Of a DNA stretch of 64,000 nucleotides, positions 10,186-64,000 are shown piece by piece; the first letter of the stretch is position 1; each line of letters starts with the position of its first letter. The notes under the pieces are model-generated. The model did not search any database, was not told the DNA's origin, and saw nothing but the letters and a program-made list of their open reading frames with translations. A program made the position numbers and the translations under genes. The DNA lies in the IMG/VR virus record IMGVR_UViG_3300017917_001342, positions 310,001 through 374,000 of that record; one strand, given 5' to 3'.

Positions 10186-10245
10186 GAATAACTCTTCTCC
10201 GGACGGTGAGATATTTATTCAAGCTAAGGTGTTTAAAATGCGCAG

Positions 10246-25397: not shown

Positions 25398-25398
25398 C

Positions 25399-51221: not shown

Positions 51222-51240
51222 GAAAATATTTATACCAATA

Positions 51241-51268
51241 AAAAAGCTGCCGTAATGGCAGCTTTTTT
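51241..51268. terminator. terminator after the tail tube gene
   Basis: AAAAAGCTGCC-GTAAT-GGCAGCTTTTT. Confidence 0.8.
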
Positions 51269-51293
51269 TGATTCTGAGTTGTATCGGTAATTA

Positions 51294-51890: not shown

Positions 51891-51954
51891 GTTAGTGTCT
51901 CCTTGTTTGCAATATTATTTATATCAACCGGTGAGGTATAATTTTCTATGCAAA

Positions 51955-51983
51955 TTGATAGTCTATCAAAGATAGACTATAAT
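51955..51983 (+). promoter_or_regulatory. sigma70 promoter with an overlapping operator-like inverted repeat
   Basis: TTGATA-N17-TATAAT; ATAGTCTATC-AAA-GATAGACTAT at 51958-51980. Confidence 0.7.
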
Positions 51984-51989
51984 TAAAAT

Positions 51990-52757
51990 ATGGAGTCTAA
52001 TATGCAAATCAAAAGAATACCCGACAGTTGGTTACTGTTTATATTTCAAGTCATTGCTCATGTAGGGTTGGTGTTACTTGTTGTTTATGGCGATTGGTAT
52101 CATTGGCTTATGAGTTTTTCAGTTTACTTTGTAACAGGTTGTTTTGGTATGACAATGACATACCACAGACTGTTAAGTCATAAAAGTTGGAATGCACCAA
52201 GTTGGTTTGAAAAATTTGGAACACTTTGTGGCACCTATGGATTAGTAGGCAGCAGTATAGGTTGGGTTGCAATTCACCGTGAGCATCACCATCACACAGA
52301 TAAAGAGCAAGACCCACATAGTCCAAAACACAAAGGTTTTGCATCAGTACAATGGTTAAGCATGTTCGAAAAACCAAACCCAAAATATGCATTGCATTTA
52401 ATTAAATCACCATTTCATTTGAATTTACACAAATACTATTTTGTTATTCACGCTGCTATATTTGTAGTATTGGCATTGATAAACCCAATGCTGTTGTTAT
52501 CGCTATATTTGGCGCCTGCTGCAATATTATGGAACGCAGGTTCATTAATAAACACACTTACACATATGGTTGGATATAGAAATTACGAAACAAGAGATGA
52601 TAGTACTAACATATTATTCTTAGGGTATTTAATGTGGGGTGAAGGCTGGCATAATAACCACCACAATCAACCAACCAATTCAACATTTGGGGAAAAATGG
52701 TGGGAATTTGACATGGGCGACAAATTTATAAAACTGATTGGGAAATCAAACACATGA
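51990..52757 (+). CDS. membrane fatty acid (delta-9 type) desaturase
   Basis: His boxes HRLLSH, HREHHHH and HNNHH; transmembrane segments; start may be the second Met (52002). Confidence 0.93.
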   Translation: MESNMQIKRIPDSWLLFIFQVIAHVGLVLLVVYGDWYHWLMSFSVYFVTGCFGMTMTYHRLLSHKSWNAPSWFEKFGTLCGTYGLVGSSIGWVAIHREHHHHTDKEQDPHSPKHKGFASVQWLSMFEKPNPKYALHLIKSPFHLNLHKYYFVIHAAIFVVLALINPMLLLSLYLAPAAILWNAGSLINTLTHMVGYRNYETRDDSTNILFLGYLMWGEGWHNNHHNQPTNSTFGEKWWEFDMGDKFIKLIGKSNT

Positions 52758-53614
52758 AAATACTAGTAACAGGAAGTGACGGTTTTATAGGAAAACATTA
52801 TTGCTCTCATGCAGAGCGCGATTCAACTGTGCTAAAAGCTGACAAACAATCTGGTATAGATATATCTAAAGACCGATCTATTTTTGACAGATTTGGCAAA
52901 TGCGATGTTGTTTTGCATTTAGCTGCAACCAATGGAACCAAACTGTTCTACGAAACGCCTGCCGACATAACCATTAATGACACACAAGCTACATTGAATT
53001 TAGTTGATTACTATAGAACAACCAATACTAAAATAGTGTTTAGTAGCAGTTGCGAAATTGTCAATGGTGCAGTCGATAGCGGATTATCAGCTGTGCCAAC
53101 CAATGAAAACACTCCAATAGTGTTCAACAACATTGCCAATCCACGATGGAGTTACAGTCTACCAAAGGCATTAGGTGAAAATCTAATAATTAACTCCGGT
53201 GCACCTTGGCTAATAATCAGGTACTTTAATGTCTACGGTCCAGGTCAGCGATATCACTTCCTTGACGAATTCATTTCAAGAGTTGCAGCAGGCGAATATT
53301 ATATAAAAGGCAACGATTATAGAAGCTTCTGTTATGTAGATGATGCTGTTGATATGACACATACCCTGATAAAACATCACCAAGGTTGCATTGTAAATAT
53401 AGGTAAGCCAGAGATGGTATTAATCAGTGATGTTGCTAGACTAATAATGGATTTAATGGGAGTAGATCCAGAGAAACTGAAAATACTACCAGGTGCAGTG
53501 GGCAGTGTATCTAAAAGATGTCCCGATACTACTCTGGTTAAAGAATTAACAGGGTTTACTCAATACACTGATTTGAAATCAGGTCTTAGAAAAACCATAG
53601 AAAGTTTATTATGA
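52754..53614 (+). CDS. NAD-dependent nucleotide-sugar epimerase/dehydratase
   Basis: TGSDGFIG, HLAA, YSLPK (YxxxK), RYFNVYGP. Confidence 0.92.
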   Translation: MKILVTGSDGFIGKHYCSHAERDSTVLKADKQSGIDISKDRSIFDRFGKCDVVLHLAATNGTKLFYETPADITINDTQATLNLVDYYRTTNTKIVFSSSCEIVNGAVDSGLSAVPTNENTPIVFNNIANPRWSYSLPKALGENLIINSGAPWLIIRYFNVYGPGQRYHFLDEFISRVAAGEYYIKGNDYRSFCYVDDAVDMTHTLIKHHQGCIVNIGKPEMVLISDVARLIMDLMGVDPEKLKILPGAVGSVSKRCPDTTLVKELTGFTQYTDLKSGLRKTIESLL

Positions 53615-54408
53615 AAATAGGAATAATAGGTGTAGGGATAGTTGGTAATGCATTAAAATATGGGTTTGAACAATTAGGACATGAAGTTCGTGTTCATGAT
53701 ATAAAATTACCAACAGCTATCACAGACGTGTTAGATACAGAAATTGCATTTATATGTGTACCTAGCCCGTCAACTGCAAACGGCGAATGCGATACAACTA
53801 TTATAGAAAGTGTAATAGACGAATTAAACAGTTACAACTATGCAGGAATAGTTGCAATAAAAACCACAGTTGTACCAGGCTTTACAGAAAGCATTATCAA
53901 ACACTATAATAAATTAATCGTATGTTTTGTTCCCGAATTTTTAAGAGAACGCTGTGCCATTGATGATTTTATAAATCAACACAGTTTATTAGCAGTAGGA
54001 ACACACGACTCTAACGTGTACAATAAAATTGTGCAAGCACATGGATATTTTCCAAAACAAACAGCACAATTAACCCCCACCGAAGCAGAGTTATTAAAAT
54101 ATTTCAACAACGTGTATGCTGCATTGCGTATTTCATTTGCTAATATAATGTACGAAGTTTCGAATAAACTGAATTGCAATTATACTACAATTAAAAATTC
54201 ATACATCATGACGGGAAAAGCTAAAGATCTATATCTAGATGTAAATCCACAATTACGTGGGTATAGTGGTACATGTTTGCCAAAAGACACAAAAGCATTG
54301 AGTGTGTTGATTAAACAATTGGATCTCGATTACGAGTTAATAGAATCAATACACAACGACAATGAAAAATTTGATAAAACTGTATTTCCGGGTATGAGAC
54401 ATGAATAA
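53611..54408 (+). CDS. UDP-glucose/GDP-mannose dehydrogenase family, lacking the C-terminal domain
   Basis: GVGIVG, PEFLRE, KYFNN, GYSGTCLPKD. Confidence 0.9.
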   Translation: MKIGIIGVGIVGNALKYGFEQLGHEVRVHDIKLPTAITDVLDTEIAFICVPSPSTANGECDTTIIESVIDELNSYNYAGIVAIKTTVVPGFTESIIKHYNKLIVCFVPEFLRERCAIDDFINQHSLLAVGTHDSNVYNKIVQAHGYFPKQTAQLTPTEAELLKYFNNVYAALRISFANIMYEVSNKLNCNYTTIKNSYIMTGKAKDLYLDVNPQLRGYSGTCLPKDTKALSVLIKQLDLDYELIESIHNDNEKFDKTVFPGMRHE

Positions 54409-55177
54409 CAGCATCAAAGACTTAATATTGTCGCAATCAACTGCTGTACGTACCAGTGTGCTACCCGAAGTTAACAATTTAATCAGCACAGTTAAACCAG
54501 ATTTCGACAGTGTAAGACCCTACAAAACAGCTATAGTAGATTGGTTAAAACCTGTTGTAGATCTATCAGGATACAGCGTTTATCCAACCAATGGTATTAC
54601 CGAAGGTTTGAATTGGTGGTATAATAGAGAAAAAAGAGCAGTATGGGTTAAGCCGGGTGATTACCAATGGGTAACTACCAGAATGAATGGCGGTCCTGCA
54701 ATTGTCTATCAAAGTTTACCTAGTAGCATAGATGGCAACTACACAGCACTACATACCGACGCTGCAATGGCATTAGACTTAGCCTATGTTGGCAGCACAG
54801 TGCCTATGCGTATAGAGTTGCATCAAAATGTAGATGTAGTGTTTTATAGTCTTAGTAAAGCGTTTGGTGTAAGAAATGTGAGAACTGGATGGATTTTTAC
54901 AAAACAACCAGACCCTGCATTAGATGCACTTACGCATAGTGCAAAATACTATAATTATTTTGCAGTCGATATAGCTGAGCGCATAATAGAGAACTACGAT
55001 ATTGGATATGTGCATAGCCGCCTTAAACACAAACAATTGCAAGTCTGCGACATGTTAGATTTAACTCCTAGTGACAGTGTTTGGTTAGCAACCAGTGAAC
55101 ATGAAGACTATGCAAAATTTAGGCGTAACCAAAACACAGCAAGAATTTGTTTATCAGGAGCATATGAATTATGTTAA
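54401..55177 (+). CDS. PLP-dependent aminotransferase (class I/II-like)
   Basis: DLAY and SLSKAFG...RTGW PLP motifs. Confidence 0.75.
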   Translation: MNNSIKDLILSQSTAVRTSVLPEVNNLISTVKPDFDSVRPYKTAIVDWLKPVVDLSGYSVYPTNGITEGLNWWYNREKRAVWVKPGDYQWVTTRMNGGPAIVYQSLPSSIDGNYTALHTDAAMALDLAYVGSTVPMRIELHQNVDVVFYSLSKAFGVRNVRTGWIFTKQPDPALDALTHSAKYYNYFAVDIAERIIENYDIGYVHSRLKHKQLQVCDMLDLTPSDSVWLATSEHEDYAKFRRNQNTARICLSGAYELC

Positions 55178-55794
55178 AAAAACATCAGTTACCAACAATC
55201 AGTAACTTCAATCTAAAAATAGATCTAGAACGTTTGCAAAAAGAAACTGACAAACTGGCAGAAAAGTTTGTCGATGTTCGAACTGCAAATCCCATGCTAT
55301 GCGACAATCACATGACACTGGTTGAACAGGTCTACGACAATTTCGAACAGATAAATTTAACCACTCCTAGTAAAATACTTCCGTATACAGACAGCGTTAA
55401 AGAAAGACTACGCAGAAAAGAAGAACATTTATATAATGTGCCAACTGAACATTACGAAGGTAGTTACTTCCAAGAGATAATCAGCCAATTAAAAGCACCT
55501 GCAAGCCGTGTACGTATTACTAAACTTGCACCAGGTAAAACTATTCCGTTCCATGTGGATTATGACGTAAACTATGCTGTAAGATGTATATGTCCAATTT
55601 ACAGCGACAGAAACGTAATCAATCTATTTAGAAGAGACGACCAGCTTGAAGCATACACGTTTGAGCCAGGTAATGCATATTTCTTGAATATTGCATATCC
55701 GCATGCTGTTATCAACATGAGCGATAAACCAAGAATTGCACTTATGTTCAGTTTAGATGGTCAAGATGACCTTATGGATTTCGCAATTCAATGA
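55171..55794 (+). CDS. Asp/Asn beta-hydroxylase-like 2OG-Fe(II) dioxygenase
   Basis: RVRITKLAPG..IPFHVD...PHAVIN....RIAL. Confidence 0.85.
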   Translation: MLKKHQLPTISNFNLKIDLERLQKETDKLAEKFVDVRTANPMLCDNHMTLVEQVYDNFEQINLTTPSKILPYTDSVKERLRRKEEHLYNVPTEHYEGSYFQEIISQLKAPASRVRITKLAPGKTIPFHVDYDVNYAVRCICPIYSDRNVINLFRRDDQLEAYTFEPGNAYFLNIAYPHAVINMSDKPRIALMFSLDGQDDLMDFAIQ

Positions 55795-56321
55795 TAAAAG
55801 AAAGTGTTAGCACTGTAGGTAATCAAGCATATCAGTTTGCGCAGTTTAAACAGAATCAGATAAATCTAATCATGTTTATCTGCAATCACTGTCCTTATGT
55901 ATTGTATAGAATGCCTGCTATTTCACAGTTAGTCGACGACTACAAGGATGCTATAAACATTGTTGCAATCAACAGCAATGATAGTAGTCCATCTACCTAT
56001 GATAGTCATCCTGAAGACGCCCCAGAGTACATGCCGGCATTTAAAATAAAACACAATCTCAATTGCGAGTATATTTTTGATGCAGACCAATCTCTAGCCA
56101 AACAATACAATATACAATGTACACCAGAATTTGTTTTAACTGATAAAAACGGTATCATTGTCTATCACGGTGAATTAGATCCCAGCAGGAAAACTAATCA
56201 ATTAAAATCCACTGGCAGCAGTCTACGTCATGCAATTGAATTAACCGTAGTCGGACAAAAAATCACATGGCAACCTGCTGCTAGCTTTGGTTGCAGTATC
56301 AAATGGAAAGAAACACTATGA
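55791..56321 (+). CDS. thioredoxin-fold redoxin (AhpC/TSA-like)
   Basis: MFICNHCPYV, INSND, CTPEF, FGCSIKW. Confidence 0.9.
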   Translation: MIKESVSTVGNQAYQFAQFKQNQINLIMFICNHCPYVLYRMPAISQLVDDYKDAINIVAINSNDSSPSTYDSHPEDAPEYMPAFKIKHNLNCEYIFDADQSLAKQYNIQCTPEFVLTDKNGIIVYHGELDPSRKTNQLKSTGSSLRHAIELTVVGQKITWQPAASFGCSIKWKETL

Positions 56322-56683
56322 AATATTGCCAAATAATGAATCCTGATACTTTTACAGATCACAGAGGTTCCATATTCAGTTTTTTTCCAGACGTTGATAT
56401 AAAAGAATACAACCTCATGGTAACATTCAAAGGCGACGAAAGAGGTTATCATTACCATCCGCATTTCTATGAATATATAATGATTGTTGACGGCGAATGC
56501 TTATTTAAGGAACATCACAACGGTGAAACAAACGAGATTCTTCTTAAAACAGGCAGTAGTGTACGAATCCCTGCGGGTATTGCACATGCATTTGTAGCGA
56601 TAACAGATCTAAAATTTGTCAGCATGCTAACACAGGGATGGAACGATAGTAATCCACCTATTGTAAAAGTAGATTTCAAATGA
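56318..56683 (+). CDS. cupin (sugar epimerase/isomerase-like)
   Basis: DHRG, RGYHYHPHFYE, IPAGIAHAF; start probably MKYCQ at 56318. Confidence 0.8.
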   Translation: MKYCQIMNPDTFTDHRGSIFSFFPDVDIKEYNLMVTFKGDERGYHYHPHFYEYIMIVDGECLFKEHHNGETNEILLKTGSSVRIPAGIAHAFVAITDLKFVSMLTQGWNDSNPPIVKVDFK

Positions 56684-57351
56684 GCAACGTAGAAACCGAT
56701 CCAGTGTTGGAGATAACAGTGTTTGAAAATGTATATGTAAAACCATACGATAAATCTTACAAAACGCAAATAGACGAGTTTTTAGAACTTGCAATTAACG
56801 AAGGCAACGACTCGTACAAAAGCAGCAATTTTCATCCGGACAATATTGACGGTCAAACGTGGATGACATTTGTTGATGGCGACCTGGCCAGTATCAGTGC
56901 AGTAGAACGTAGTCATTATACTGGTGACCCTGACATAGCCGGGCGAGTTTGTAGGTACCACATACTGAAAAAATACAGACATAGCAATGCCGGATTTAGA
57001 ATGTTAAACGACCAAGTACAATGGGCTAAAGAAGTCGGTCTAAAAACACTGTACTGGACTCATAATGTAAACAACAAAGCACTGAACGCAATGTATCAAC
57101 ATAAACGCACAATGCCATTCAGAGGTGAAAGTGTACCGTATTTTATGACTGATACATATAAAGCATTTGTTTTACAGCCCGATATGATATTCAAAGTAAG
57201 TCCAAAAAGTGATTTCTTACAATACGTTTATGCTAATATGTTAGTCGAAGGATTTGTCTGGAGACCAGAGCATCCGACTATTATCTATTATGAACACAAC
57301 GGCGAAATAACAGAAACTATAAAATCCGCAGTACTAAGCCTAGGGTCGTAA
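56680..57351 (+). CDS. GNAT-like acetyltransferase
   Basis: R....KKYRHSNAG (motif A-like), N.KALNAMY. Confidence 0.6.
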   Translation: MSNVETDPVLEITVFENVYVKPYDKSYKTQIDEFLELAINEGNDSYKSSNFHPDNIDGQTWMTFVDGDLASISAVERSHYTGDPDIAGRVCRYHILKKYRHSNAGFRMLNDQVQWAKEVGLKTLYWTHNVNNKALNAMYQHKRTMPFRGESVPYFMTDTYKAFVLQPDMIFKVSPKSDFLQYVYANMLVEGFVWRPEHPTIIYYEHNGEITETIKSAVLSLGS

Positions 57352-57858
57352 TACCAATTCAGTTATCTCATATTGATTGTTGTGTATTGCATCTAACAGA
57401 AATTTAGATGCATATGCATGCGATATCTTTCCTGCACCATCACCTAAATATCCAGGTTTAAATATCATTAATTTACAACCATGTCGATCGTGGCTGTTAA
57501 CAAGTTGATATGTTGCAACGTCAAGTGCTTTTTTAACCGTGCTATATAGGCAAGGTCTTAAACGCCACTCTGCTGCATTGCTAGCCATACTACCTACAGT
57601 AACTATGAGTTTTTTACTGTTCTTCCATTCATCGTACAGTTCATAAAGAAGATCTAACTGCCCATATCTGTCATACGCATTGTTTATAAAAACGTCACAA
57701 TGTGTCACAGTGTCAATCAAACGTTTCCTATCATCGCGATTGGTTATATCAAATCCGTTTGATCTGCTGAACCCAATCACATCAATATCTTGTTCAATTG
57801 AATAGTTGTAAATGCTCTTACCTAGTCCAGATGTGTGTCCAGTTATTGCCAACTTCAT
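57340..57858 (-). CDS. short-chain dehydrogenase/reductase
   Basis: TGHTSGLG, FINNA, YSTVK. Confidence 0.85.
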   Translation of the reverse strand: MKLAITGHTSGLGKSIYNYSIEQDIDVIGFSRSNGFDITNRDDRKRLIDTVTHCDVFINNAYDRYGQLDLLYELYDEWKNSKKLIVTVGSMASNAAEWRLRPCLYSTVKKALDVATYQLVNSHDRHGCKLMIFKPGYLGDGAGKISHAYASKFLLDAIHNNQYEITELVLRP

Positions 57859-58952
57859 TTTATTTCTTTCATATAATTGTGTATATCTAGTACAAATTTT
57901 GCGTTAACAGATCTGTCCAACGACGTTTGCTTATTCAGTTGCAGTGTGTTTTTATCTTTATAGATCCAAGAGTAGGGATCGTCTATAGATTGCAATAATG
58001 AATTAACACGCTTTAATTCATTGAGCAAACCGTGCAATCTATCTGCATCATTTTTTATAAAATCAAATGATAAATCGAAATAGTTATCGTACAGTTTAAA
58101 TCCTAAATCTTTTAAGTAATGATTAACACCGGGCTGTCCCCATATTATAATAGGTCGATTGAACAACAGATACTTGAAAGTCTTTTCAGTGATATAAAAA
58201 CCAATGTCATCTAATATAGTATCTTGCACTAATATAAAACTGTAATTGATTGCAGATGTGCAGATATCTTCTGTCCATTGCACTGGCATGTCTGTGTCAA
58301 AATCTGTTCTATCAATTTCATAATTCTTTAAAAACACGCTGTCAGATTTGCATTCTATATTAAATCTAGTCAGATGATCTTTTAATACGTGCGGCTCTAC
58401 AATGCTTTGACTTATAGCTGCATTTAAATCATTCTCGATAATAAGGTAATTCATTGCGTTTCTATGAGCCCGAGGATTTCTAGAAAATGTGATAAATCCT
58501 GGTACTACTTTATCGGGATCGGTTCCTATTCTATCTTTGAACATGTGATTTATTTCAACAAACGTTGCAACAGGAAATGTTGCTATTTTATTTTTGAAAT
58601 CGGTAGTCAAAAACCAATTGTTGTAGGTTGATATTTCTCTATCAAGATTTGCAGTTAACAAAATTACATTTGGTTCTGGTATGTCATACTTTATACAGTC
58701 CATATGTATGCTATAATACAAATGTCCAATATCAAACGATTCCCAAGTATAGTCTAGCACTATAAAATGATCTTTTGCACGTTGTAATTCGTCTGCTGTA
58801 AGACTATCAAATATAGGCATATGTATTAACGACTGTGCACCACTGATAATATCCCAATGCGGATTTACTGATTTAGTAACAATTTCTTTTGAGAAATTAT
58901 ATTCGACACCCCAGGGTTTGTTATAGTTCATCCCATCTACTAACAAAGTCAT
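57855..58952 (-). CDS. hypothetical protein, possible GT-B (GT10-like) glycosyltransferase
   Basis: YITEKTFK...RPIIIWG motif. Confidence 0.45.
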   Translation of the reverse strand: MTLLVDGMNYNKPWGVEYNFSKEIVTKSVNPHWDIISGAQSLIHMPIFDSLTADELQRAKDHFIVLDYTWESFDIGHLYYSIHMDCIKYDIPEPNVILLTANLDREISTYNNWFLTTDFKNKIATFPVATFVEINHMFKDRIGTDPDKVVPGFITFSRNPRAHRNAMNYLIIENDLNAAISQSIVEPHVLKDHLTRFNIECKSDSVFLKNYEIDRTDFDTDMPVQWTEDICTSAINYSFILVQDTILDDIGFYITEKTFKYLLFNRPIIIWGQPGVNHYLKDLGFKLYDNYFDLSFDFIKNDADRLHGLLNELKRVNSLLQSIDDPYSWIYKDKNTLQLNKQTSLDRSVNAKFVLDIHNYMKEIK

Positions 58953-59671
58953 TATAACAATTCCTCAAATATATAAAATTCTTTTGACAACACAGGTTTT
59001 ACAAAATCGTTAACATCTAAAATTACCGAATCACCGTTTAACCATTTTACTGCTAAGTTTGCTAGTATTTCATTATTTTCTTTTGTCATATGGCATTTTC
59101 TCATATCATATTCAAAAATAGGATATTCTATATTCCATGCTGTGTTTTCCATAGCAAACACATCAGTCAATGTATTGCCAACTATATTTTCGAAACTGTT
59201 ATTGAAATTGGGAACTAGCATTATATCCGGTCTCAGCTTTTTACAGTAATCTACTAGACTATTGTGTATTAAGTTTACATGATCTTCTTGATATATGTAA
59301 ATGTAATAATCTAATACGCTGTTTAATTCTGTTAACCATTTTTCTTTTTTTGCTCTATCATACCATAATTTACTGTATTCGTAATTAACGAAATGCGGAG
59401 TTGGTTGGTTGTCGCTAGGAAAGCCCATTGTTACACGACCAGGATGCGTAACTAATAAAATTACCTTGTCGTACAAATGATGCGTGGACTTTAACAGGTC
59501 TGCACTGTAAACAAGACTAGAACTAAATGCAGAATAGTTTGTTACAGCGTACTTACTAGCTAGTATTTCTGTCCAATCTAAACCTATGTAACTGAGATAT
59601 TGTTTACCAGATTCTGAAACATTGAACGCAAACCCAGATCCGAAACTGTCACCGTATATACCGATTTTCAT
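58952..59671 (-). CDS. SGNH/GDSL-like protein
   Basis: IGIYGDSF; C-term CH.T...N. Confidence 0.5.
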   Translation of the reverse strand: MKIGIYGDSFGSGFAFNVSESGKQYLSYIGLDWTEILASKYAVTNYSAFSSSLVYSADLLKSTHHLYDKVILLVTHPGRVTMGFPSDNQPTPHFVNYEYSKLWYDRAKKEKWLTELNSVLDYYIYIYQEDHVNLIHNSLVDYCKKLRPDIMLVPNFNNSFENIVGNTLTDVFAMENTAWNIEYPIFEYDMRKCHMTKENNEILANLAVKWLNGDSVILDVNDFVKPVLSKEFYIFEELL

Positions 59672-60450
59672 TTTAGGTTAGACTCAATTATCTGCGCAGC
59701 AGTGCGATGACTCAGTGTTCCGTAGTGTATTAGGTCTCTAGCACTGTCTAATTTATATAGCTGCTGTATGCCTAGCACTTTAGCTGTTTCTTCAAAAAAA
59801 CTAACCTGTGCATATCTGGTTCGTGTTTTCCAAAATCCTTCGCACGCCATACCAGTAAAATACATCTGTGCTTGCGAGTTAGTGTCATTGCCGTTCCAGA
59901 TTTCAAATAGAGATTTGAGGCGTTTATCAAAATTGTCCCAGCGACCACCACTCCAGTATCCAACCCTTGATACTTTGTTTTCCTCATAATATAGGAATCT
60001 GCCAATGTCGCTCCATACTTGCACAACTGCATAGGGAGTTGGATACCATTTGTCTAATAATAAACTGTTATGCCAACTAAACATCGGACTTGTGCCAGAT
60101 TGACCAATGTTTATAACTGGCCTATCTGTTAATCTAGACAAGTGATAGCAAAGTGTTTCTGTTTCAGCTAATCCTTCTCCAAACACATGCGAACACCCAA
60201 ATACTACTATGCTTTCTTTCCAATCAACTGTGTCCCATTCCGGTGCTCTATAATAGTTTTGATTGAGGTTATACTTCACTTCCTTTGTTCTATAGGGCCA
60301 ATCAGCTGGTTGATTTTTTAGGTTTTCATAATAGGCCGCTTTTTCTTCTACTGATAAAAAATCAGGTAGGAGTTTACCATATTTTAATTCGTTCGGTAAT
60401 ACCAAAGGGAACGGCCCAGGTAAAAAAGCGTTTGGTTCTAAATAGTTCAT
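59668..60450 (-). CDS. SGNH/GDSL-like protein
   Basis: VFGCSHVFG, NIGQSGTS, ARDLIHYG. Confidence 0.55.
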   Translation of the reverse strand: MNYLEPNAFLPGPFPLVLPNELKYGKLLPDFLSVEEKAAYYENLKNQPADWPYRTKEVKYNLNQNYYRAPEWDTVDWKESIVVFGCSHVFGEGLAETETLCYHLSRLTDRPVINIGQSGTSPMFSWHNSLLLDKWYPTPYAVVQVWSDIGRFLYYEENKVSRVGYWSGGRWDNFDKRLKSLFEIWNGNDTNSQAQMYFTGMACEGFWKTRTRYAQVSFFEETAKVLGIQQLYKLDSARDLIHYGTLSHRTAAQIIESNLK

Positions 60451-61037
60451 TTACGTTTTGGTACAGAAACTAAACTAGGATCTTTTAATTCAGCGATGTC
60501 AATTGGCATAGCAATTGTCATTATTGCAACTAATTTATTAGACATATTGACAAAGTTATGCCAAACAGTATTTGATGCAAACGTAGGTTTAGTAATCTCA
60601 AATTGAGTTGTAGCATTATCATAGGTAAAAACACCTGTCCCTAAAATAGGAAATACCAGTGTTGTTCCGCCAAAGTTTCCTTTATCAATGTGCTCTTGTA
60701 AATGCGCACCAGGTACTAACAACAAAAATGCAGTACCCATATCATCAATATTAACAGTCAACGAATTATCTCTAATCATTTGAAATTTAATATCAGCAAT
60801 GATATTTTTATATTCTATATGTTCTGGATATGTACTCCATGAAAGTTTTTTGTCTTTTTTAGAAAAAGAAACAGCTAAGTTAAAAAGTGACGCATTTTGA
60901 TCATTGCTTTCATATGTCGATGTTTCAAAATCACTAGACATTAATAGGTTAATAAATCTATCGCTTTGCAGTGTACTTAAAAACTCATCGTATCTAGAAG
61001 TTGTGCAGGGATAGCGTGTTGGTACATATTCGTTCAT
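60447..61037 (-). CDS. 2OG-Fe(II) dioxygenase-like (DSBH) protein
   Basis: LQEHID...VWHNFVN. Confidence 0.6.
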   Translation of the reverse strand: MNEYVPTRYPCTTSRYDEFLSTLQSDRFINLLMSSDFETSTYESNDQNASLFNLAVSFSKKDKKLSWSTYPEHIEYKNIIADIKFQMIRDNSLTVNIDDMGTAFLLLVPGAHLQEHIDKGNFGGTTLVFPILGTGVFTYDNATTQFEITKPTFASNTVWHNFVNMSNKLVAIMTIAMPIDIAELKDPSLVSVPKRK

Positions 61038-61588
61038 TTGATTAACAGACCTCGTGTATAAAGATCTTTTAATACGTCATATGTGTAAGGCTCCATGAAA
61101 CAAACACTAAGGTTTATTCTAGGACTGCTGCTTTTTCTATTGTCTACACCGTGTGGTACATTTCTAAACAAAATGGGTTCTGTATAAAGCACACTGTCTA
61201 TGATATGCCCATTTGAGTAATCATGAAACTTTTGTTGCTTGCCAACTTGACCTTCCCATTCTGGTATATGCCAAAAGTCTAAAGTATGTTGCTCATAGCT
61301 GTCTGTACATGGTATTAGTATTGCAGCACTTCTGCCATTATCAACATGCGGAATTAGCAATTCACCTGCTCTACAGGCTATTAAAATACCCATGTAACTC
61401 CAAATTGGTAACAGTTGATCTTTTAACCAATCAGGCTCGTATTTTTTGTAATACTGCACATACCCGTGATTCTCATGTTCGGGTGTAATCTCAGACCATC
61501 CAGTCCTATCGTTTATTACAGTTTGCAAATGTGCCTTGTCTATTTTTAATTCAGGGAGTTTGCAATATAGTTCCATATTATTCTCCAA
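61034..61588 (-). CDS. 2OG-Fe(II) dioxygenase-like protein
   Basis: IPHVD...PHGVDN...PRINLS. Confidence 0.7.
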   Translation of the reverse strand: MENNMELYCKLPELKIDKAHLQTVINDRTGWSEITPEHENHGYVQYYKKYEPDWLKDQLLPIWSYMGILIACRAGELLIPHVDNGRSAAILIPCTDSYEQHTLDFWHIPEWEGQVGKQQKFHDYSNGHIIDSVLYTEPILFRNVPHGVDNRKSSSPRINLSVCFMEPYTYDVLKDLYTRGLLIK

Positions 61589-62345
61589 TAGAAATGCAGC
61601 GTATATTACACGGACTGTCTAATATATACTTAACTGCATTTACTATGTCTCTACTTTTAACATTTTGAGTTATTTTTACAGTAGTAAATTCGTCTGACGG
61701 ATGATCGCCTATGTAAATGACAAACTTGTTTTTATGCTGTTTTGCAAAAAATATGTTATCGGTTATTAGTATGTCACAGGCATCTGCATTTGAATGTGTG
61801 TTAAAGTATGCTTTTAATACAGCATTGTCAAAGGTCTGACATATGTTATAGTCTTGTGTCCATTTCGTAACAAGCGTATCTGTTTTTTCCATGTTGACAA
61901 TTTCGTCATAGGATTTGTCAAAATGAAATAACAGATTATATCTAGGTTTATCTGAATAGTTAATACCATTGTGCCAAGTCTTGGCATTTGTTACAACTGG
62001 ATTGCTGTAATAGTAATCAACTTCTTCATCATTTACTTTAAATCGTATCAAATGAGGAGTAGTATCAATTGGTACAATTAGTGTGCAACCTCTAGTAAAA
62101 TCAGTGTGCCAGCCAGTTTCATGACCAGGTGGTACGTAGCTAAAACTATAGGTGGTAGAATCTAACAGACGATTTTTAATACGTATAGCTTCTATGCTAA
62201 CTGGAAACACAATATCTCTATGTGTGCTGAAAAAGGTTTTACCTCTATCAGCAGTGTATTGCGGCCAATGTTTTATATCAGAAATGGTCTCGTATAAAAA
62301 TTCTCTGTCATAATCAAGAGTTATCGGATAGATGTAGTCATCCAT
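61578..62345 (-). CDS. 2OG-Fe(II) dioxygenase-like protein with a C-terminal extension
   Basis: GWHTD...WHNGIN...PRYNL. Confidence 0.7.
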   Translation of the reverse strand: MDDYIYPITLDYDREFLYETISDIKHWPQYTADRGKTFFSTHRDIVFPVSIEAIRIKNRLLDSTTYSFSYVPPGHETGWHTDFTRGCTLIVPIDTTPHLIRFKVNDEEVDYYYSNPVVTNAKTWHNGINYSDKPRYNLLFHFDKSYDEIVNMEKTDTLVTKWTQDYNICQTFDNAVLKAYFNTHSNADACDILITDNIFFAKQHKNKFVIYIGDHPSDEFTTVKITQNVKSRDIVNAVKYILDSPCNIRCISIGE

Positions 62346-62928
62346 GTTTCATATTCTTTGTTAATGTTATATCTTCAACGCATTCCGGTGCATCGATTAT
62401 CCATTTGATAACAGATGCAACATACTCTGTATTTAATTTAGGTTCATCTGGGTGCAATTTGTCAACGTATGGTGTATGCATATGTCCGAGGCTCATATAT
62501 GTACACTTTATGTTAGGCGTTATAGTTGTTCTGTTATGATTGATAGTTTGACACAGTTGCTTTAATGCAATTTTTTCACTGCTGTAGCTTATGTATTTTA
62601 ACCAAGGCTGTGCAGTATTAATGTGATCACTAATGCTGCCAATGCATATAACATGTCCAGACTTGTTGCTTTGTTCCCAATCAACATAGAGTTTGTGCAA
62701 CAATCTAACTTGACTATAGTTGTTCATTTTTTCAGTATAGCAATTTAAAATCACCACGTCATAATGACATGCAATGTGACAGAATTTATCCATACCTTCG
62801 TCAGTAGATAAATCATAGCCATTTGATCTACTAGCAAAACTGCTTTTTAGCAGTGTATTAATTCCAGCAGCAAGGCCGTACGATGGATTACCCGTTGTTA
62901 GAATATGTGTTACTGGTTGTCCGGCCAT
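62338..62928 (-). CDS. short-chain dehydrogenase/reductase
   Basis: TTGNPSYGLA, VILN, YSSEK. Confidence 0.75.
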   Translation of the reverse strand: MAGQPVTHILTTGNPSYGLAAGINTLLKSSFASRSNGYDLSTDEGMDKFCHIACHYDVVILNCYTEKMNNYSQVRLLHKLYVDWEQSNKSGHVICIGSISDHINTAQPWLKYISYSSEKIALKQLCQTINHNRTTITPNIKCTYMSLGHMHTPYVDKLHPDEPKLNTEYVASVIKWIIDAPECVEDITLTKNMKHG

Positions 62929-63359
62929 ATTGATAATCCTAACCTTTGACTAGAAATTTCACTTATATCATGTATTATGTCAACTTGTATACGATGCCAC
63001 GTATGCAGTGGTGCAGTTGCTTCGTAAACTATTTCGGTAGAGTCGTCATTGTACCAGCGAGTTCTCACATTGTCGCCACCAGTTAAAAACAAATAGTTGT
63101 AACAAAATGTTCTACCAACATCGCGATGAGGCGTTAGCTGCACACCGATTAATTGATAGTTTGCTTTGATTTTGAAGCTAAAATGCTGTTGCAAAAAATC
63201 ATGCAACTCGTCGCTTATAGCATGTGTAAAGTACCAATGATCGCCCGACGGATCATCGGAAAACATGTTTTTACCTTTGCGTATAATAGCAGGATCTGTT
63301 ATTGCAAGACCTTCTGGTATTTTTGGTAAATTTGGTTCTATTTGATAATATGGTAACAT
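62910..63359 (-). CDS. 2OG-Fe(II) dioxygenase-like protein
   Basis: TPHRD...IIHDI...RLGLS. Confidence 0.65.
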   Translation of the reverse strand: MLPYYQIEPNLPKIPEGLAITDPAIIRKGKNMFSDDPSGDHWYFTHAISDELHDFLQQHFSFKIKANYQLIGVQLTPHRDVGRTFCYNYLFLTGGDNVRTRWYNDDSTEIVYEATAPLHTWHRIQVDIIHDISEISSQRLGLSIWPDNQ

Positions 63360-63362
63360 TTA

Positions 63363-63824
63363 TTATCCTTGTAGTAAACGTTTTCTAGCATACCAACTAA
63401 GAGGCAAATTCAATGTTTTATAATCTTCGCCGGTTACTTTGCCTCTGCACTTGGGTGATCCGCACTTGCAAACTTCTATCGGATTCTTTTTGGTTAAGAA
63501 AAAAGTTCCGTAGTCTACTGTGATGAATTCGCCTTGTTGTATATCGCGCAATGCTCTAAATACAATTTGCCCATCTATATAGCAATTTGGATCACAACTG
63601 TGATTAACATATGCTTCGTATTCACTGCCAGCAGGCAAATCTAATACAAAGTCTTTATCAATCAGCAATCCTTTATACCAAGTGGTTTCTTGGTTGTTTA
63701 TTGCTATGCCGCCTGCAACAAATATCACATCGTCTTTATTAATTACAGAAGTTGCACATCTACACAAACCATGTACTGCACTTTCTTTTACTTCGGTATT
63801 TTTATTAATCCAAAAATAATGCAT
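63363..63824 (-). CDS. SET-domain lysine methyltransferase with post-SET
   Basis: YVNHSCDPNC, ALRDI..GEFITVDYG, CKCGSPKCRG; start probably MHYF at 63824. Confidence 0.92.
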   Translation of the reverse strand: MHYFWINKNTEVKESAVHGLCRCATSVINKDDVIFVAGGIAINNQETTWYKGLLIDKDFVLDLPAGSEYEAYVNHSCDPNCYIDGQIVFRALRDIQQGEFITVDYGTFFLTKKNPIEVCKCGSPKCRGKVTGEDYKTLNLPLSWYARKRLLQG

Positions 63825-64000
63825 TAAATTTAGGATCCTCAAAGTTTGCTAATACTAGTATGTGGTAACGTGCATCGCCTGCTGTATTATTTACAGCATG
63901 GTTATGTTGTGTGTTTATTATCCATGCTTCATTAAAACCATAATGTTGAACATGCAATGTTTTATCCATGTATACTAACATAGATGCATGTTCAGATGTA
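63805..64000 (-). CDS. C-terminus of another Asp/Asn beta-hydroxylase-like 2OG-Fe(II) dioxygenase (5'-truncated)
   Basis: Manual translation: ...AWIINTQHNHAVNNTAGDARYHILV...LFLD*. Confidence 0.65.
   Translation of the reverse strand, partial: TSEHASMLVYMDKTLHVQHYGFNEAWIINTQHNHAVNNTAGDARYHILVLANFEDPKFNALFLD

What the first reader, a model, noticed from the sequence alone, without database searches (positions are those of the whole stretch)
51990..64000. 12-kb convergent tailoring-enzyme island resembling a biosynthetic gene cluster
Seen: about 19 tightly coupled genes in two blocks that meet tail-to-tail with a 12-nt overlap at 57340-57351. They encode a desaturase, epimerase, UDP-sugar dehydrogenase, aminotransferase, redoxin, cupin, GNAT, two SDRs, two SGNH-like proteins, a GT-like protein, six dioxygenases and a SET methylase. 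Established: these families build and decorate nucleotide sugars, lipids and protein side chains. Inference: an undescribed phage pathway that modifies virion proteins, the host envelope (superinfection exclusion) or a small molecule. The product cannot be deduced from sequence, and the island continues beyond the window.
Basis: partly seen in the sequence, partly recalled or inferred. Interest (0 to 1): 0.75.

Follow-up and report, generated by a model that had tools for sequence, protein, structure and literature searches.

The report
Tailoring-enzyme island between phage tail genes
A 518-kb freshwater jumbo phage carries a tightly packed 25.5-kb block of 34 oxidising, methylating, sugar-handling and radical-SAM enzyme genes between its tail-sheath and tail-tube genes; the genes are real, under selection and partly shared with many aquatic phages, but what they make or modify is still unknown.

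Summary
Window 51990-64000 has 19 coupled ORFs in two convergent blocks that overlap by 12 nt (57340-57351). Each family call is supported, some only weakly.

The stretch is the left half of a larger unit. It is a 25,534-bp, 34-gene island at 35.4% GC (genome 40.7%). It fills the variable slot between the tail-tube gene (51294-51890) and a 1344-aa tail-sheath gene beyond the window. The unseen half adds five radical-SAM enzymes, two PP-loop ATPases, methyltransferases and more AspH-type oxygenases.

A core kit recurs in many aquatic viral contigs and in Pelagibacter phage Mosig: desaturase, minimal PLP enzyme, AspH-type oxygenase, GNAT, short SDR and radical-SAM genes. About a third of the genes, including the sugar-nucleotide genes, were found in none of 20 related loci.

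Independent freshwater assemblies bridge the junction without indels. Of the differences listed, 32 are synonymous and 8 are not.

No precursor peptide, Wzx/Wzy-like protein, PEP mutase, DegT or TGT was found.

Best guess (about 0.35): a cytoplasmic pathway that decorates a macromolecule, most likely virion proteins. The product is not deducible. Similar islands in pelagimyophages are described, so this is a new variant of a known kind.

The parts
51294..51890 (-). Left flank: tail-tube gene (198 aa), not part of the island
   Evidence: 52.5% identical to the annotated tail tube protein of Sinorhizobium phage Phosso. Weak Pfam Phage_T4_gp19 hit. 73% identical to the gene at the same position in the closest relative G005.
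51955..51983 (+). Sigma-70-like promoter match (TTGATA-17-TATAAT) in the only intergenic gap on this side
   Evidence: 11 of 12 consensus matches. The total number of such matches in the region is no higher than in shuffles, so only its position is suggestive.
51990..52757 (+). g01, membrane di-iron desaturase of the delta-9 (DesC/SCD) type, 255 aa
   Evidence: Pfam FA_desaturase 2e-13 and NCBIfam DesA family 6e-30, below that family's cut-off. His boxes HRLLSH, HREHH and HNNHH, with two hydrophobic stretches. 64-80% identical orthologues in 12 IMG/VR loci; 15 of the 20 loci compared have a match.
52754..53614 (+). g02, extended-SDR NDP-sugar epimerase/dehydratase/decarboxylase, 286 aa
   Evidence: Pfam Epimerase 1e-31. 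Best NCBIfam hits are LegB 4,6-dehydratase and UDP-xylose/4-keto-pentose synthase, all below cut-off. Absent from all 20 related loci.
53611..54408 (+). g03, truncated NDP-sugar 6-dehydrogenase, 265 aa
   Evidence: NCBIfam NDP-sugDHase 1.8e-37, covering profile positions 68-300 of 413. GxGxxG and the catalytic Cys motif (TCLPKD) are present; the C-terminal UDP-binding domain is missing. Paralogues lie at genome 93594-94766 and 236446-237204.
54401..55177 (+). g04, minimal fold-type-I PLP enzyme (aminotransferase class I/II-like), 258 aa
   Evidence: 385 or more homologues, those listed 55-82% identical (one 99% copy aside), all unnamed and without Pfam. Invariant S152-K153, D126, Y129, R161 and R248. 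AF2 pLDDT 91.7; Foldseek hits are TAA1, HisC, CobD and C-S lyases. Paralogue g30 lies beyond the window.
55171..55794 (+). g05, AspH-type Fe(II)/2OG oxygenase, 207 aa
   Evidence: Pfam Asp_Arg_Hydrox 4e-8. HxD...H plus Arg in the alignment. Present in 14 of 20 related loci.
55791..56321 (+). g06, thioredoxin-fold redoxin/peroxiredoxin-like, 176 aa
   Evidence: Pfam Redoxin 4e-12 and AhpC-TSA 2e-11. CxxC motif. Mosig has a peroxiredoxin in its block, but no sequence match was found in the related loci.
56291..56683 (+). g07, small metal-binding cupin (RmlC/ketoisomerase-like), 130 aa
   Evidence: Pfam Cupin_2 3e-9 and a weak dTDP_sugar_isom hit. HxH...E...H motif. The TTG start is uncertain.
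56680..57351 (+). g08, GNAT-fold acyl/acetyltransferase, 223 aa; last gene of the + block
   Evidence: Pfam Acetyltransf_1 3e-5, PHROG acetyltransferase and a weak PDB GNAT profile hit. Present in 11 of 20 related loci, with an invariant RxCRYHILK block.
57340..57858 (-). g09, short SDR-like protein, 172 aa; last gene of the - block, overlapping g08 by 12 nt
   Evidence: Weak adh_short and Epimerase hits. N-terminal TGxxxGxG-like motif. Paralogues g16 and g24. Present in 8 of 20 loci.
57855..58952 (-). g10, GT-B-fold glycosyltransferase-like protein, 365 aa
   Evidence: No Pfam, NCBIfam or PHROG family. 2661 cluster representatives at E<=1e-3. AF2 pLDDT 88; the top Foldseek hits are all GT-B enzymes (GtfA, SdgB, FucT13, TarM, LpxB, MurG) at TM 0.3-0.44. 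A homologue sits beside three radical-SAM genes in another contig. Paralogues lie inside and next to the 86-102 kb radical-SAM array.
58952..59671 (-). g11, SGNH/DUF6071-like protein, 239 aa
   Evidence: Atlas feature search gives viral DUF6071/Lipase_GDSL clusters at 0.95-0.96; this is a lead only. No Pfam hit.
59668..60450 (-). g12, SGNH/GDSL-hydrolase-like protein, 260 aa
   Evidence: Atlas structure search gives GDSL, SGNH and ALGX clusters at TM 0.61-0.66. A 37%-identical paralogue lies at genome 9013-9780.
60447..61037 (-). g13, putative divergent 2OG-oxygenase (DSBH), 196 aa
   Evidence: hhalign against the AspH-like alignment is weak (E 0.016), but it aligns HID and WHNFVN onto the catalytic motifs. 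Motif-level support only.
61034..61588 (-). g14, putative divergent 2OG-oxygenase, 184 aa
   Evidence: PHVD ... PHGVDN ... PRINL motifs. Motif-level support only.
61578..62345 (-). g15, AspH-type Fe(II)/2OG oxygenase with a C-terminal extension, 255 aa
   Evidence: Pfam Asp_Arg_Hydrox 7e-5, above the cut-off. 78% identical orthologue next to the g09 orthologue in L007.
62338..62928 (-). g16, short SDR-like protein, 196 aa
   Evidence: Weak adh_short hit at 1e-3, below the cut-off. 34% identical to g24 (E 3e-28) and to g09.
62910..63359 (-). g17, 149-aa protein, possibly a 2OG-oxygenase
   Evidence: Only a PHRD ... WHR motif. hhalign found nothing. The weakest of the 19 assignments.
63363..63842 (-). 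g18, SET-domain methyltransferase with a post-SET Cys cluster, 159 aa
   Evidence: Pfam SET 4e-12. NHSCDPN, the VDY motif and CKCGSPKC. Weak homologues in 4 related loci.
63805..64000 (-). g19, C-terminal part of a 256-aa AspH-type oxygenase. The - block runs on for 15 more genes to genome 387523, which would be window coordinate 77523.
   Evidence: The whole gene is L002:805-1575 (-), Pfam Asp_Arg_Hydrox 3e-6. Beyond it lie two more AspH-like genes, two PP-loop/QueC-like ATPases, radical-SAM genes g23, g26 (B12-binding), g28, g32 and g34, one more SDR, two methyltransferase-like genes, a second PLP-like gene and a nitroreductase-like gene. A terminator-like hairpin and the 1344-aa sheath gene follow.

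Best explanation
SHOWN. The 12-kb stretch is the left half of a 25.5-kb, 34-gene, low-GC accessory island. A 518-kb freshwater myophage related to Atu_ph07, Phosso and PA5oct carries it in the variable slot between its tail-sheath and tail-tube genes.

The island is a mosaic of two parts:
- A recurrent kit: a delta-9-type membrane desaturase, a minimal PLP aminotransferase-fold enzyme, AspH-type 2OG oxygenases, a GNAT, short SDRs and a SET methyltransferase. Beyond the window the kit adds N-terminal-twitch, B12-binding and other radical-SAM enzymes and PP-loop ATPases.
- Lineage-specific insertions: an NDP-sugar dehydratase/decarboxylase, a truncated NDP-sugar dehydrogenase, a cupin, a redoxin, a GT-B glycosyltransferase-like protein, two SGNH-like proteins and extra oxygenases.

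The genes are intact and under purifying selection.

INFERRED. The island works in the cytoplasm of the infected cell as a tailoring pathway.
1. Sugar-nucleotide enzymes, radical-SAM enzymes and methyltransferases build and modify an activated sugar.
2. The GT-B protein transfers it, and the SGNH-like proteins add or remove O-acyl groups.
3. The SET, AspH-type and GNAT enzymes methylate, hydroxylate and acylate the same acceptor.
4. The acceptor I favour is a phage structural protein (tail or fibre), giving a chemically decorated virion surface.

The desaturase may be a separate membrane-fluidity gene that travels with the kit.
For: Extent and position:
- Searches give the extent. One search shows the same sheath-island-tube arrangement in the closest relative, G005.
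- One search shows the tube gene next to the desaturase in five relatives' contigs (G005/L008, L007, L010, L012, L017).
- Searches show that in phage Phosso the sheath-tube slot holds other cargo.

Coupling, composition and selection:
- 30 of 33 junctions overlap.
- GC is 35.4% against 40.7% for the genome.
- Independent contigs carry no indels, and the listed differences are 32 synonymous to 8 non-synonymous.

Recurrent kit:
-.

Sugar logic:
- g02, g03 and g07 are sugar-nucleotide families.
- g10 has a GT-B fold, and its best solved matches include the protein O-GlcNAc transferases GtfA and SdgB.
- g10 relatives sit beside radical-SAM arrays.
- A full-length NDP-sugar dehydrogenase lies inside the genome's largest radical-SAM array, and a carbamoyltransferase lies about 2 kb from its end.

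Protein-directed logic:
- g18 is a canonical SET domain with a post-SET cluster. From general knowledge, SET enzymes are known to methylate protein lysines.

Cytoplasmic locus of action:
- Only g01 has membrane segments, and the island has no Wzx/Wzy-like multi-pass protein.
- In Mosig the similar block abuts tail-fibre genes.
Against: - No acceptor has been identified, and nothing here detects a modification.
- In other relatives the kit is not next to structural genes. In G001 and G002 it lies 100 kb or more from the sheath. In a 309-kb ENA contig it follows DHFR and thymidylate synthase.
- A strong hairpin followed by a T-run separates the sheath gene from the island. The + block has a sigma-70-like promoter. 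Co-expression with late structural genes is therefore not shown.
- The sugar genes g02, g03 and g07 and the SGNH-like genes are absent from all 20 related loci. The conserved kit may therefore have nothing to do with sugars.
- g03 lacks its UDP-binding domain.
- The GT-B assignment has low TM-scores.
- AspH-family enzymes in bacteria also act on lipids (LpxO, OlsC; general knowledge).
Confidence: 0.35

Rival explanations
1. Host-envelope remodelling. The desaturase, AspH/LpxO-like hydroxylases, GNAT and sugar-nucleotide enzymes change host membrane lipids, lipid A or surface glycans during infection. The effect would be on membrane fluidity, phosphorus economy or superinfection exclusion.
For: - g01 has the full delta-9 desaturase His-box set and membrane segments. 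Phage desaturases of this type are an established auxiliary gene (PMC5776448).
- g02's NCBIfam hits include UDP-4-keto-pentose synthase and ArnA. Mosig annotates an ArnB-like aminotransferase in its block.
- The pelagimyophage paper proposes surface alteration and coinfection avoidance for such islands (PMC7029224).
Against: - All enzymes but g01 are soluble, and the AspH-like proteins lack the membrane anchors of LpxO-type enzymes.
- The island has no flippase, polymerase or polyprenyl-phosphate transferase-like multi-pass protein.
- The genome has no DegT/ArnB-type aminotransferase.
- SET and the radical-SAM enzymes have no obvious role in this reading.
Confidence: 0.2
2. No single pathway. 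The slot between sheath and tube is a hyperplastic dump where unrelated auxiliary genes accumulate, each acting alone. Examples would be a desaturase for membranes, oxygenases for repair or hydroxylation, and a redoxin for oxidative stress.
For: - The GC is distinct and low.
- 12 of 34 genes are unique among 20 related loci, and gene order is shuffled.
- The slot holds unrelated cargo in Phosso.
- Many paralogues suggest duplication and drift.
Against: - 30 of 33 junctions overlap, in two long operon-like blocks.
- The same five to eight families recur together in distant phages, including a pelagimyophage.
- The convergent g08/g09 arrangement is kept in L007.
- The listed differences point to purifying selection.
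Confidence: 0.2
3. Small-molecule natural product. The island, with the genome's other radical-SAM arrays, makes a modified sugar-based or peptide-derived metabolite (aminoglycoside-, nucleoside- or RiPP-like). Such a metabolite would act on the host or on competitors.
For: - The enzyme palette is typical of such clusters: B12-binding radical-SAM (best hits PhpK-type and RiPP C-methyltransferases), twitch or SPASM radical-SAM enzymes, PLP enzymes, SDRs, methyltransferases, a nitroreductase-like protein, GT-B and PP-loop ATPases.
- A carbamoyltransferase lies near another radical-SAM array.
Against: - There is no room for a precursor-peptide gene. The largest gap is 5 nt, and the flanking gaps of 99 and 105 nt hold a promoter-like site and a hairpin.
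- No scaffold-forming enzyme (NRPS, PKS, cyclase, PEP mutase) was detected.
- The island has no exporter.
Confidence: 0.12
4. Nucleic-acid hypermodification. PP-loop/QueC-like ATPases, radical-SAM enzymes, 2OG oxygenases and a GT-B transferase (the fold of T4 beta-glucosyltransferase) modify phage DNA or host tRNA.
For: - g22 and g25 have weak QueC and TilS-like PP-loop hits.
- T4 BGT appears among the GT-B fold matches.
- The genome also has PTPS (QueD-like) and QueF-like genes.
- In another phage the kit follows DHFR and thymidylate synthase.
Against: - No TGT/DpdA base-exchange enzyme is in the genome.
- No QueC match is above the cut-off.
- The oxygenases are AspH-type, not the TET/JBP or AlkB type.
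- The PLP enzyme keeps an invariant C-terminal Arg, which in class I aminotransferases binds an amino-acid carboxylate (my reading).
Confidence: 0.08

Closest known systems
Hypervariable 'host recognition cluster' islands of pelagimyophages and cyanomyophages (PMC7029224); example Pelagibacter phage Mosig (MT647606)
   Same: - A large non-syntenic island within the structural region of a myophage.
- Mosig's block holds Asp_Arg_Hydrox, FA_desaturase, a short aminotransferase, a peroxiredoxin, an N-acetyltransferase, MoaA-like radical-SAM enzymes, nitroreductase-domain proteins, a methyltransferase and a carbamoyltransferase, in convergent or divergent blocks.
- g01, g04, g05, g08 and g30 have sequence matches there.
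   Different: - The published island lies between VrlC and gp14 and contains tail fibres. Here the island lies between sheath and tube and has no fibre gene.
- The host phage is a 518-kb freshwater relative of Atu_ph07 and PA5oct, not a roughly 140-kb T4-like marine phage.
- The radical-SAM content is far larger.
- The published interpretation (O-chain change by GT8 glycosyltransferases) does not apply to these gene families.
Cyanophage-encoded DesC-type lipid desaturase, vFAD (PMC5776448)
   Same: g01 is a short membrane desaturase with the three His boxes of delta-9 (DesC/SCD-type) enzymes. It is carried by an aquatic myophage.
   Different: - No close match to cultured cyanophage genomes. 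tblastn finds only Mosig and two Acinetobacter phage records at 30-33%.
- Here the gene is the first in an operon-like block with a PLP enzyme, an oxygenase and a GNAT.
- Activity was not tested.
Virus-encoded glycosylation machineries (mycobacteriophage virion glycosylation; giant-virus fibril glycan clusters) - recalled from general knowledge, not tested here
   Same: Viral genes for sugar-nucleotide modification plus glycosyltransferases that act in the cytoplasm on virion proteins. This is the mechanism I favour.
   Different: - No acceptor motif or glycan was shown here.
- Those systems lack the radical-SAM, 2OG-oxygenase and SET complement.
- The g10 family is not in any CAZy-linked Pfam family.
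RiPP clusters of the proteusin/polytheonamide kind and methyl-coenzyme M reductase maturation - general knowledge
   Same: The combination of a B12-dependent radical-SAM C-methyltransferase-like enzyme, other radical-SAM enzymes, Fe/2OG hydroxylases and SAM methyltransferases on one substrate.
   Different: - No precursor gene fits in or beside the island.
- No leader-peptide-binding (RRE) or protease gene was detected.
- Sugar enzymes are present.
NCBIfam NF033640, N-terminal twitch-domain radical SAM family
   Same: g28 and g34 score 246 and 367 bits against a cut-off of 170. They keep CxxxCxxC and the N-terminal Cys cluster.
   Different: - The family has no assigned reaction.
- Here it is expanded to 16 paralogues in one phage genome.
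- It has more than 1,600 relatives in metagenomes, the 120 listed being at least 63% identical.

Membership tests
Delta-9 (DesC/SCD-type) membrane fatty-acid desaturase (g01) | Three His boxes HxxxxH, HxxHH and HxxHH, in that order | tested here: met
   HRLLSH at residue 59, HREHH at 96 and HNNHH at 221. Pfam FA_desaturase is above its cut-off.
Delta-9 (DesC/SCD-type) membrane fatty-acid desaturase (g01) | Membrane-spanning hydrophobic segments flanking the His boxes | tested here: met
   Kyte-Doolittle stretches at residues 10-36 and 146-181. This is a crude method.
Delta-9 (DesC/SCD-type) membrane fatty-acid desaturase (g01) | Desaturase activity and regiospecificity | not testable with these tools
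   Needs expression and fatty-acid analysis. The NCBIfam DesA model scores 105 bits against a cut-off of 400, so it is not an equivalog.
SET-domain protein lysine methyltransferase (g18) | SET signature motifs (NHSC, the ELxF/YDY-type Tyr motif) and a post-SET Cys cluster | tested here: met
   Pfam SET 47 bits against a cut-off of 22.4. NHSCDPN, ITVDYG and CKCGSPKC are present.
UDP-glucose/GDP-mannose 6-dehydrogenase (g03) | Three domains: NAD-binding, central with the catalytic Cys, and a C-terminal UDP-binding domain | tested here: not met
   The N-terminal and central domains are found and the Cys motif is kept. The profile is covered only over positions 68-300 of 413, and there is no C-terminal domain hit.
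Class I/II (fold-type I) aminotransferase (g04) | PLP-lysine in an SxSK context, Asp to the pyridine N, phosphate-binding Arg and a carboxylate-binding C-terminal Arg; fold-type I architecture | tested here: met
   Invariant S152-K153, D126, Y129, R161 and R248 across 34 sequences. AF2 and Foldseek give probability 1.0 to TAA1, HisC and CobD. Pfam is just under its cut-off, 19.6 against 19.7. At 258 aa it is about 100 aa shorter than known members.
Sugar aminotransferase (DegT/DnrJ/EryC1) | A match to PF01041 | tested here: not met
   No match anywhere in the genome.
GT-B glycosyltransferase (g10) | Two Rossmann-like domains with an inter-domain cleft; similarity to solved GT-B enzymes | tested here: inconclusive
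   All top Foldseek hits in PDB and Swiss-Prot models are GT-B enzymes at probability 0.9-1.0, but TM is only 0.3-0.44. No Pfam GT family matches it or 39 relatives. Donor binding was not tested.
AspH-type Fe(II)/2OG oxygenase (PF05118) | Pfam match above the cut-off and an HxD/E...H metal triad with a 2OG-binding basic residue | tested here: met
   Met for g05, g15 and g19 by Pfam. In the alignment g05 and g15 keep HxD...H plus Arg, while g19 shows no clear Asp at the HxD position. For g13, g14 and g17 there are motifs only, so those three are inconclusive.
NF033640 N-terminal-twitch radical SAM (g28, g34; beyond the window) | Score above the curated cut-off; CxxxCxxC plus an N-terminal Cys cluster | tested here: met
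   246 and 367 bits against a cut-off of 170. Invariant C138, C142 and C145, and C10, C29, C81 and C84.
RiPP biosynthetic gene cluster | A precursor-peptide gene in or next to the cluster | tested here: not met
   The largest internal gap is 5 nt. The flanking gaps of 99 and 105 nt hold a promoter-like site and a hairpin. I ran no dedicated search for small ORFs nested inside or antisense to the island genes.
O-antigen/capsule assembly locus | Initiating polyprenyl-phosphate transferase and a Wzx/Wzy or ABC export component | tested here: not met
   The island has no protein with 4 or more hydrophobic segments. GT2 genes exist elsewhere in the genome. This was a crude hydropathy screen, not a family search.
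Pelagimyophage host recognition cluster (PMC7029224) | Position between VrlC and neck protein gp14, containing the tail-fibre genes | tested here: not met
   Here the island lies between the sheath and tube genes and has no fibre gene. Gene content overlaps with the block in Mosig.
7-deazaguanine DNA modification system | DpdA/TGT-family transglycosylase plus QueC, QueD and QueE | tested here: not met
   No TGT match. QueC-like hits are below the cut-off. PTPS and QueF-like genes exist elsewhere.

The most novel reading that the evidence does not exclude
The island, together with the genome's other radical-SAM arrays, belongs to a widespread and so far uncharacterised viral decoration system. 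In this reading, families of N-terminal-twitch radical-SAM enzymes (16 paralogues here) work with an unclassified GT-B-like partner family, minimal PLP enzymes and AspH-type oxygenases. Together they build unusual, heavily modified glycans or side-chain modifications on virion proteins, a kind of chemical armour or adhesion layer of large aquatic phages. That would define new radical-SAM chemistry on sugars or proteins, and a new layer of phage-host and phage-environment interaction.
Probability: 0.22. Interest if true: 0.85.

Novelty: new variant of a known kind. Interest (0 to 1): 0.6.

Why it matters
Large aquatic phages carry big blocks of enzyme genes whose products nobody has identified. 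This island shows three things:
- Such a block can sit in the middle of the tail module of a half-megabase freshwater phage.
- It has a core shared across marine and freshwater phages as distant as pelagimyophages.
- It rests on large, well-conserved protein families with no assigned function. The g04 PLP family has hundreds of members. The g10 GT-B-like family has more than 2,600 cluster representatives. NF033640 radical-SAM enzymes have more than 1,600 relatives, the 120 listed being at least 63% identical.

If the target is the virion, phage particles may be chemically decorated far more than assumed. That would bear on adsorption, stability, grazing and immune recognition. If the target is the host envelope or a metabolite, it is a new class of auxiliary metabolism.

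Either way, the kit gives a defined and testable set of genes.

Tried and rejected
- Nucleotide search of the island against 50,697 phage records: no match.
- PHROGs on ten island proteins: only one weak acetyltransferase hit.
- NCBIfam on the unknowns g10-g14 and g17: nothing.
- PDB sequence searches for g23, g34, g05 and the g08 profile: only generic radical-SAM or GNAT hits, or non-significant ones.
- The search for related loci with g10 in viral contigs: none.
Bacterial contexts of that family were therefore not obtained.
- Phosphonate hypothesis, raised by the PhpK-like B12 radical-SAM enzyme: rejected, no PEP mutase.
- Ara4N or amino-sugar route via a DegT-type aminotransferase: rejected.
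- 7-deazaguanine DNA modification: not supported, no TGT/DpdA.
- RiPP reading: no space for a precursor. The small Mosig ORFs next to its block do not look like precursors.
- Small ORFs in the 142-154 kb radical-SAM region turned out to be tRNA genes read as ORFs.
- Co-transcription with the sheath gene: not supported, because a hairpin terminator lies between them.
- Literature searches for phage, jumbo-phage or megaphage radical-SAM islands found no description of this system.
- My early assumption of a marine origin was wrong for this phage. The runs holding it are pond and freshwater, although relatives of single genes occur in Tara ocean data.
- I sent no complex-prediction job, because I make no specific binding claim.

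Full report
OBSERVATION. The ORF list for 50000-64000 gives eight + strand ORFs from 51990 to 57351. It gives eleven - strand ORFs from 57340 to beyond the window end. Over the whole island, 30 of 33 gene junctions overlap or abut, and the largest gap is 5 nt.

All 19 family labels could be mapped one-to-one onto the ORFs.
- Solid by Pfam or NCBIfam: desaturase, NAD epimerase/dehydratase, NDP-sugar dehydrogenase, redoxin, cupin, SET, and three Asp_Arg_Hydrox oxygenases.
- Weak but consistent: GNAT (3e-5) and the two short SDRs.
- Only after extra work:
  - The 'aminotransferase' g04 is a minimal fold-type-I PLP enzyme.
  - The 'GT-like' g10 has a GT-B-like model.
  - g11 and g12 resemble SGNH, GDSL and DUF6071 proteins.
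  - g13, g14 and g17 carry only HxD...H motifs.
- Corrections:
  - g03 lacks the C-terminal UDP-binding domain, though its GxGxxG and catalytic Cys motifs are kept.
  - g04 is not a DegT-type sugar aminotransferase, and the genome has none.

TRUE EXTENT AND CONTEXT. The window is bases 310001-374000 of a 518,643-bp virus record with direct terminal repeats. The - block continues for 15 more genes to genome 387523. Those genes are:
- two more AspH-like proteins;
- two PP-loop/QueC-like ATPases;
- a third short SDR;
- five radical-SAM enzymes: one B12-binding, two of NCBIfam NF033640 'N-terminal twitch' at 246 and 367 bits against a cut-off of 170, and two others;
- two methyltransferase-like proteins;
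- a paralogue of g04;
- a nitroreductase-like protein.

After these come a 12-bp-stem hairpin followed by a T-run and a 1344-aa tail-sheath gene (Pfam sheath C-terminal domain). That sheath is 44-45% identical to the sheaths of Sinorhizobium phage Phosso and Agrobacterium phage Atu_ph07, and 51% identical over half its length to PA5oct-like phages.

On the other side, the gene at 51294-51890 is 52.5% identical to Phosso's annotated tail tube protein. The next genes match Phosso's second tube protein and its head completion protein.

The unit is therefore a 25,534-bp, 34-gene island in the sheath-tube slot. In Phosso that slot holds about 4 kb of unrelated genes. The island's GC is 35.4% against 40.7% for the genome.

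COMPARISON WITH RELATIVES. The closest relative found is G005, whose sheath is 73% identical. It has a 17-kb island in the same slot with the same polarity. That island shares g32, g30, two g34-like genes, g24, g23 (84%), g04, a g09-like gene, g05 (75%) and g01 (69%), but none of the rest.

The tube gene lies next to the desaturase in five relatives' contigs (G005/L008, L007, L010, L012, L017). In L007 the order is g01-g04-g05-g08, convergent with g09-g15. That is the present arrangement minus g02, g03, g06, g07 and g10-g14. Those genes therefore look like later insertions into an older module.

Presence across the 20 related loci compared:

| Gene(s) | Loci with a match (of 20) |
|---|---|
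| g01 | 15 |
| g05 | 14 |
| g28/g34 family | 12 |
| g08 | 11 |
| g04, g09, g23, g32 | 8 each |
| 12 other genes | 0 |

The loci were fetched with g01 or g26 as bait, so these counts are biased towards those anchors.

The kit also occurs away from structural genes. In a 309-kb ENA contig it follows DHFR and thymidylate synthase. In the complete relatives G001 and G002 it lies far from the sheath.

Pelagibacter phage Mosig has an annotated block next to tail-fibre genes. It holds Asp_Arg_Hydrox, FA_desaturase, aminotransferase, peroxiredoxin, N-acetyltransferase, MoaA-like radical-SAM, nitroreductase, methyltransferase and carbamoyltransferase genes.

REALITY AND SELECTION. The stretch is held by pond, freshwater and other aquatic metagenome runs from several studies. 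Contigs from three runs other than the probable source cross the convergent junction. They differ by substitutions only, with no indels. Of the 40 differences the tool listed, 32 are synonymous and 8 are not. This is consistent with purifying selection on g04-g11. The g04 and g34 families have hundreds to thousands of well-conserved, unnamed relatives in metagenomes.

WHAT IT MOST LIKELY DOES.

Shown:
- The enzyme families present.
- Their coupling.
- A conserved core.
- A cytoplasmic setting. Only g01 has membrane segments, and the island has no multi-pass protein.

Inferred: two chemical themes are visible.

(a) Sugar handling.
- g02 is LegB-, UDP-xylose-synthase- or ArnA-like.
- g03 is a truncated sugar dehydrogenase.
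- g07 is an RmlC/ketoisomerase-like cupin.
- g10 is GT-B-like.
- g11 and g12 are SGNH-like. From general knowledge, that fold is used for glycan O-acetylation.
- The radical-SAM enzymes are linked to this theme in three ways. A g10 relative sits beside three radical-SAM genes in another contig. One g10 paralogue and a full-length sugar dehydrogenase lie inside this genome's 86-102 kb radical-SAM array, and another g10 paralogue abuts it. A carbamoyltransferase lies about 2 kb from that array's end.

(b) Side-chain chemistry typical of protein substrates.
- g18 is a canonical SET domain with a post-SET cluster.
- There are six to nine AspH-type oxygenases, a GNAT, and B12-binding and twitch radical-SAM enzymes.

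The simplest single story is a cytoplasmic pathway that builds a modified sugar and transfers it, along with methyl, hydroxyl and acyl groups, onto a macromolecular acceptor. I favour virion proteins as that acceptor for four reasons:
- The position inside the tail module is conserved in this clade.
- Mosig's block is adjacent to fibre genes.
- The machinery is soluble.
- The best solved GT-B matches include the protein O-GlcNAc transferases GtfA and SdgB.

I put this at about 0.35. The terminator after the sheath gene and the sigma-70-like promoter before g01 mean that late co-expression is not shown. The sugar genes are not part of the conserved core.

RIVALS.
- Host-envelope or lipid remodelling (0.2). 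For it: the desaturase is a known auxiliary gene type (PMC5776448), some hits are ArnA-like, and the pelagimyophage paper proposes surface alteration (PMC7029224). Against it: there are no membrane-bound transferases or flippases.
- An unconnected collection of auxiliary genes (0.2). For it: low GC, many unique genes and shuffled order. Against it: coupling and recurrent co-occurrence.
- A small-molecule or RiPP product (0.12). For it: the enzyme palette. Against it: no precursor space, no scaffold enzyme and no PEP mutase.
- Nucleic-acid hypermodification (0.08). For it: PP-loop/QueC-like proteins and PTPS and QueF-like genes elsewhere. Against it: no TGT/DpdA and no TET/JBP-type oxygenase.

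RELATION TO WHAT IS KNOWN. The general phenomenon is published for pelagimyophages and cyanomyophages. It is a hypervariable island in the structural region of aquatic myophages, with glycosyltransferases and radical-SAM cassettes. The same paper lists Asp/Asn beta-hydroxylase among the genes core to all pelagimyophages (PMC7029224). The delta-9 desaturase is a known cyanophage gene (PMC5776448).

This case differs in five ways:
- The phage lineage: a half-megabase relative of Atu_ph07 and PA5oct from fresh water.
- The slot: sheath-tube rather than VrlC-gp14, with no fibres.
- The scale of the radical-SAM complement: 24 Pfam matches and 16 NF033640 paralogues in the genome.
- The recognisable conserved kit.
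- The unclassified GT-B-like and minimal PLP families.

I found no paper describing this kit or its product. I therefore rate it a new variant of a known kind, with moderate-to-good interest. The product remains unknown.

Noticed in passing
Genome G000: 86985-102212 (L032), 143730-152251 (L033), 453176-457640 (L034), 24999-27113 and 469207-470079: The phage genome has 24 Radical_SAM (PF04055) matches. Sixteen are paralogues of NCBIfam NF033640 (N-terminal twitch radical SAM), all above the curated cut-off. Most lie in tandem arrays; the largest holds about a dozen consecutive genes of 330-490 aa. None of 14 control genomes has a member above the cut-off.
   Followed up: partly
L032:318-1811 (-) = genome 83318-84811: A NodU/CmcH-type carbamoyltransferase (Pfam E 6e-52 and 6e-39) lies about 2 kb from the end of the largest radical-SAM array. 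That array contains a g10 paralogue and a full-length NDP-sugar dehydrogenase paralogue, and a second g10 paralogue abuts it.
   Followed up: partly
Genome 102524-104029 (+), just beyond the end of L032: A 501-aa ORF reads like an RpoD-type sigma-70 factor. This is judged by eye from the translation and was not tested against a family library.
   Followed up: no
L034:8721-9116, 9120-9605 and 9607-10452 (+); genome 294682-295095 (+): A QueF-like gene (Pfam 3e-18), a DHFR-like ORF (judged by eye) and a thymidylate synthase (2e-103) lie beside a radical-SAM cluster. A PTPS/QueD-like gene lies elsewhere. The genome has no TGT/DpdA and no QueC match above the cut-off.
   Followed up: partly
L033 (genome 142001-154000): Eleven tRNA genes (Met x2, Asn, Arg x2, Gly, Val x2, Ala, Thr, Leu) are interleaved with four N-twitch radical-SAM genes.
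   Followed up: yes
L002:14597-14625 (genome 387597-387625): A perfect 12-bp-stem palindromic hairpin flanked by A and T runs lies directly after the tail-sheath stop codon. It looks like a bidirectional intrinsic terminator that insulates the sheath gene from the island.
   Followed up: partly
window 49023-49466 (-): A 147-aa protein has a strong TnsA-like endonuclease N-terminal domain hit (Pfam 1e-22). It is 55% identical to the Phosso gene annotated as head completion protein.
   Followed up: no
L002:14629-18663 (-) = genome 387629-391663: The tail sheath is unusually long (1344 aa). Only residues of about 1-170 and 825-1340 align with relatives' sheaths of 1000-1107 aa, so the middle 650 or so residues are a lineage-specific insertion of unknown fold.
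   Followed up: no
window 4014-4391 (-) = genome 314014-314391; also genome 301343-301651 and 493332-494599: Four GT2-family glycosyltransferase matches lie outside the island, one of them inside this window.
   Followed up: no
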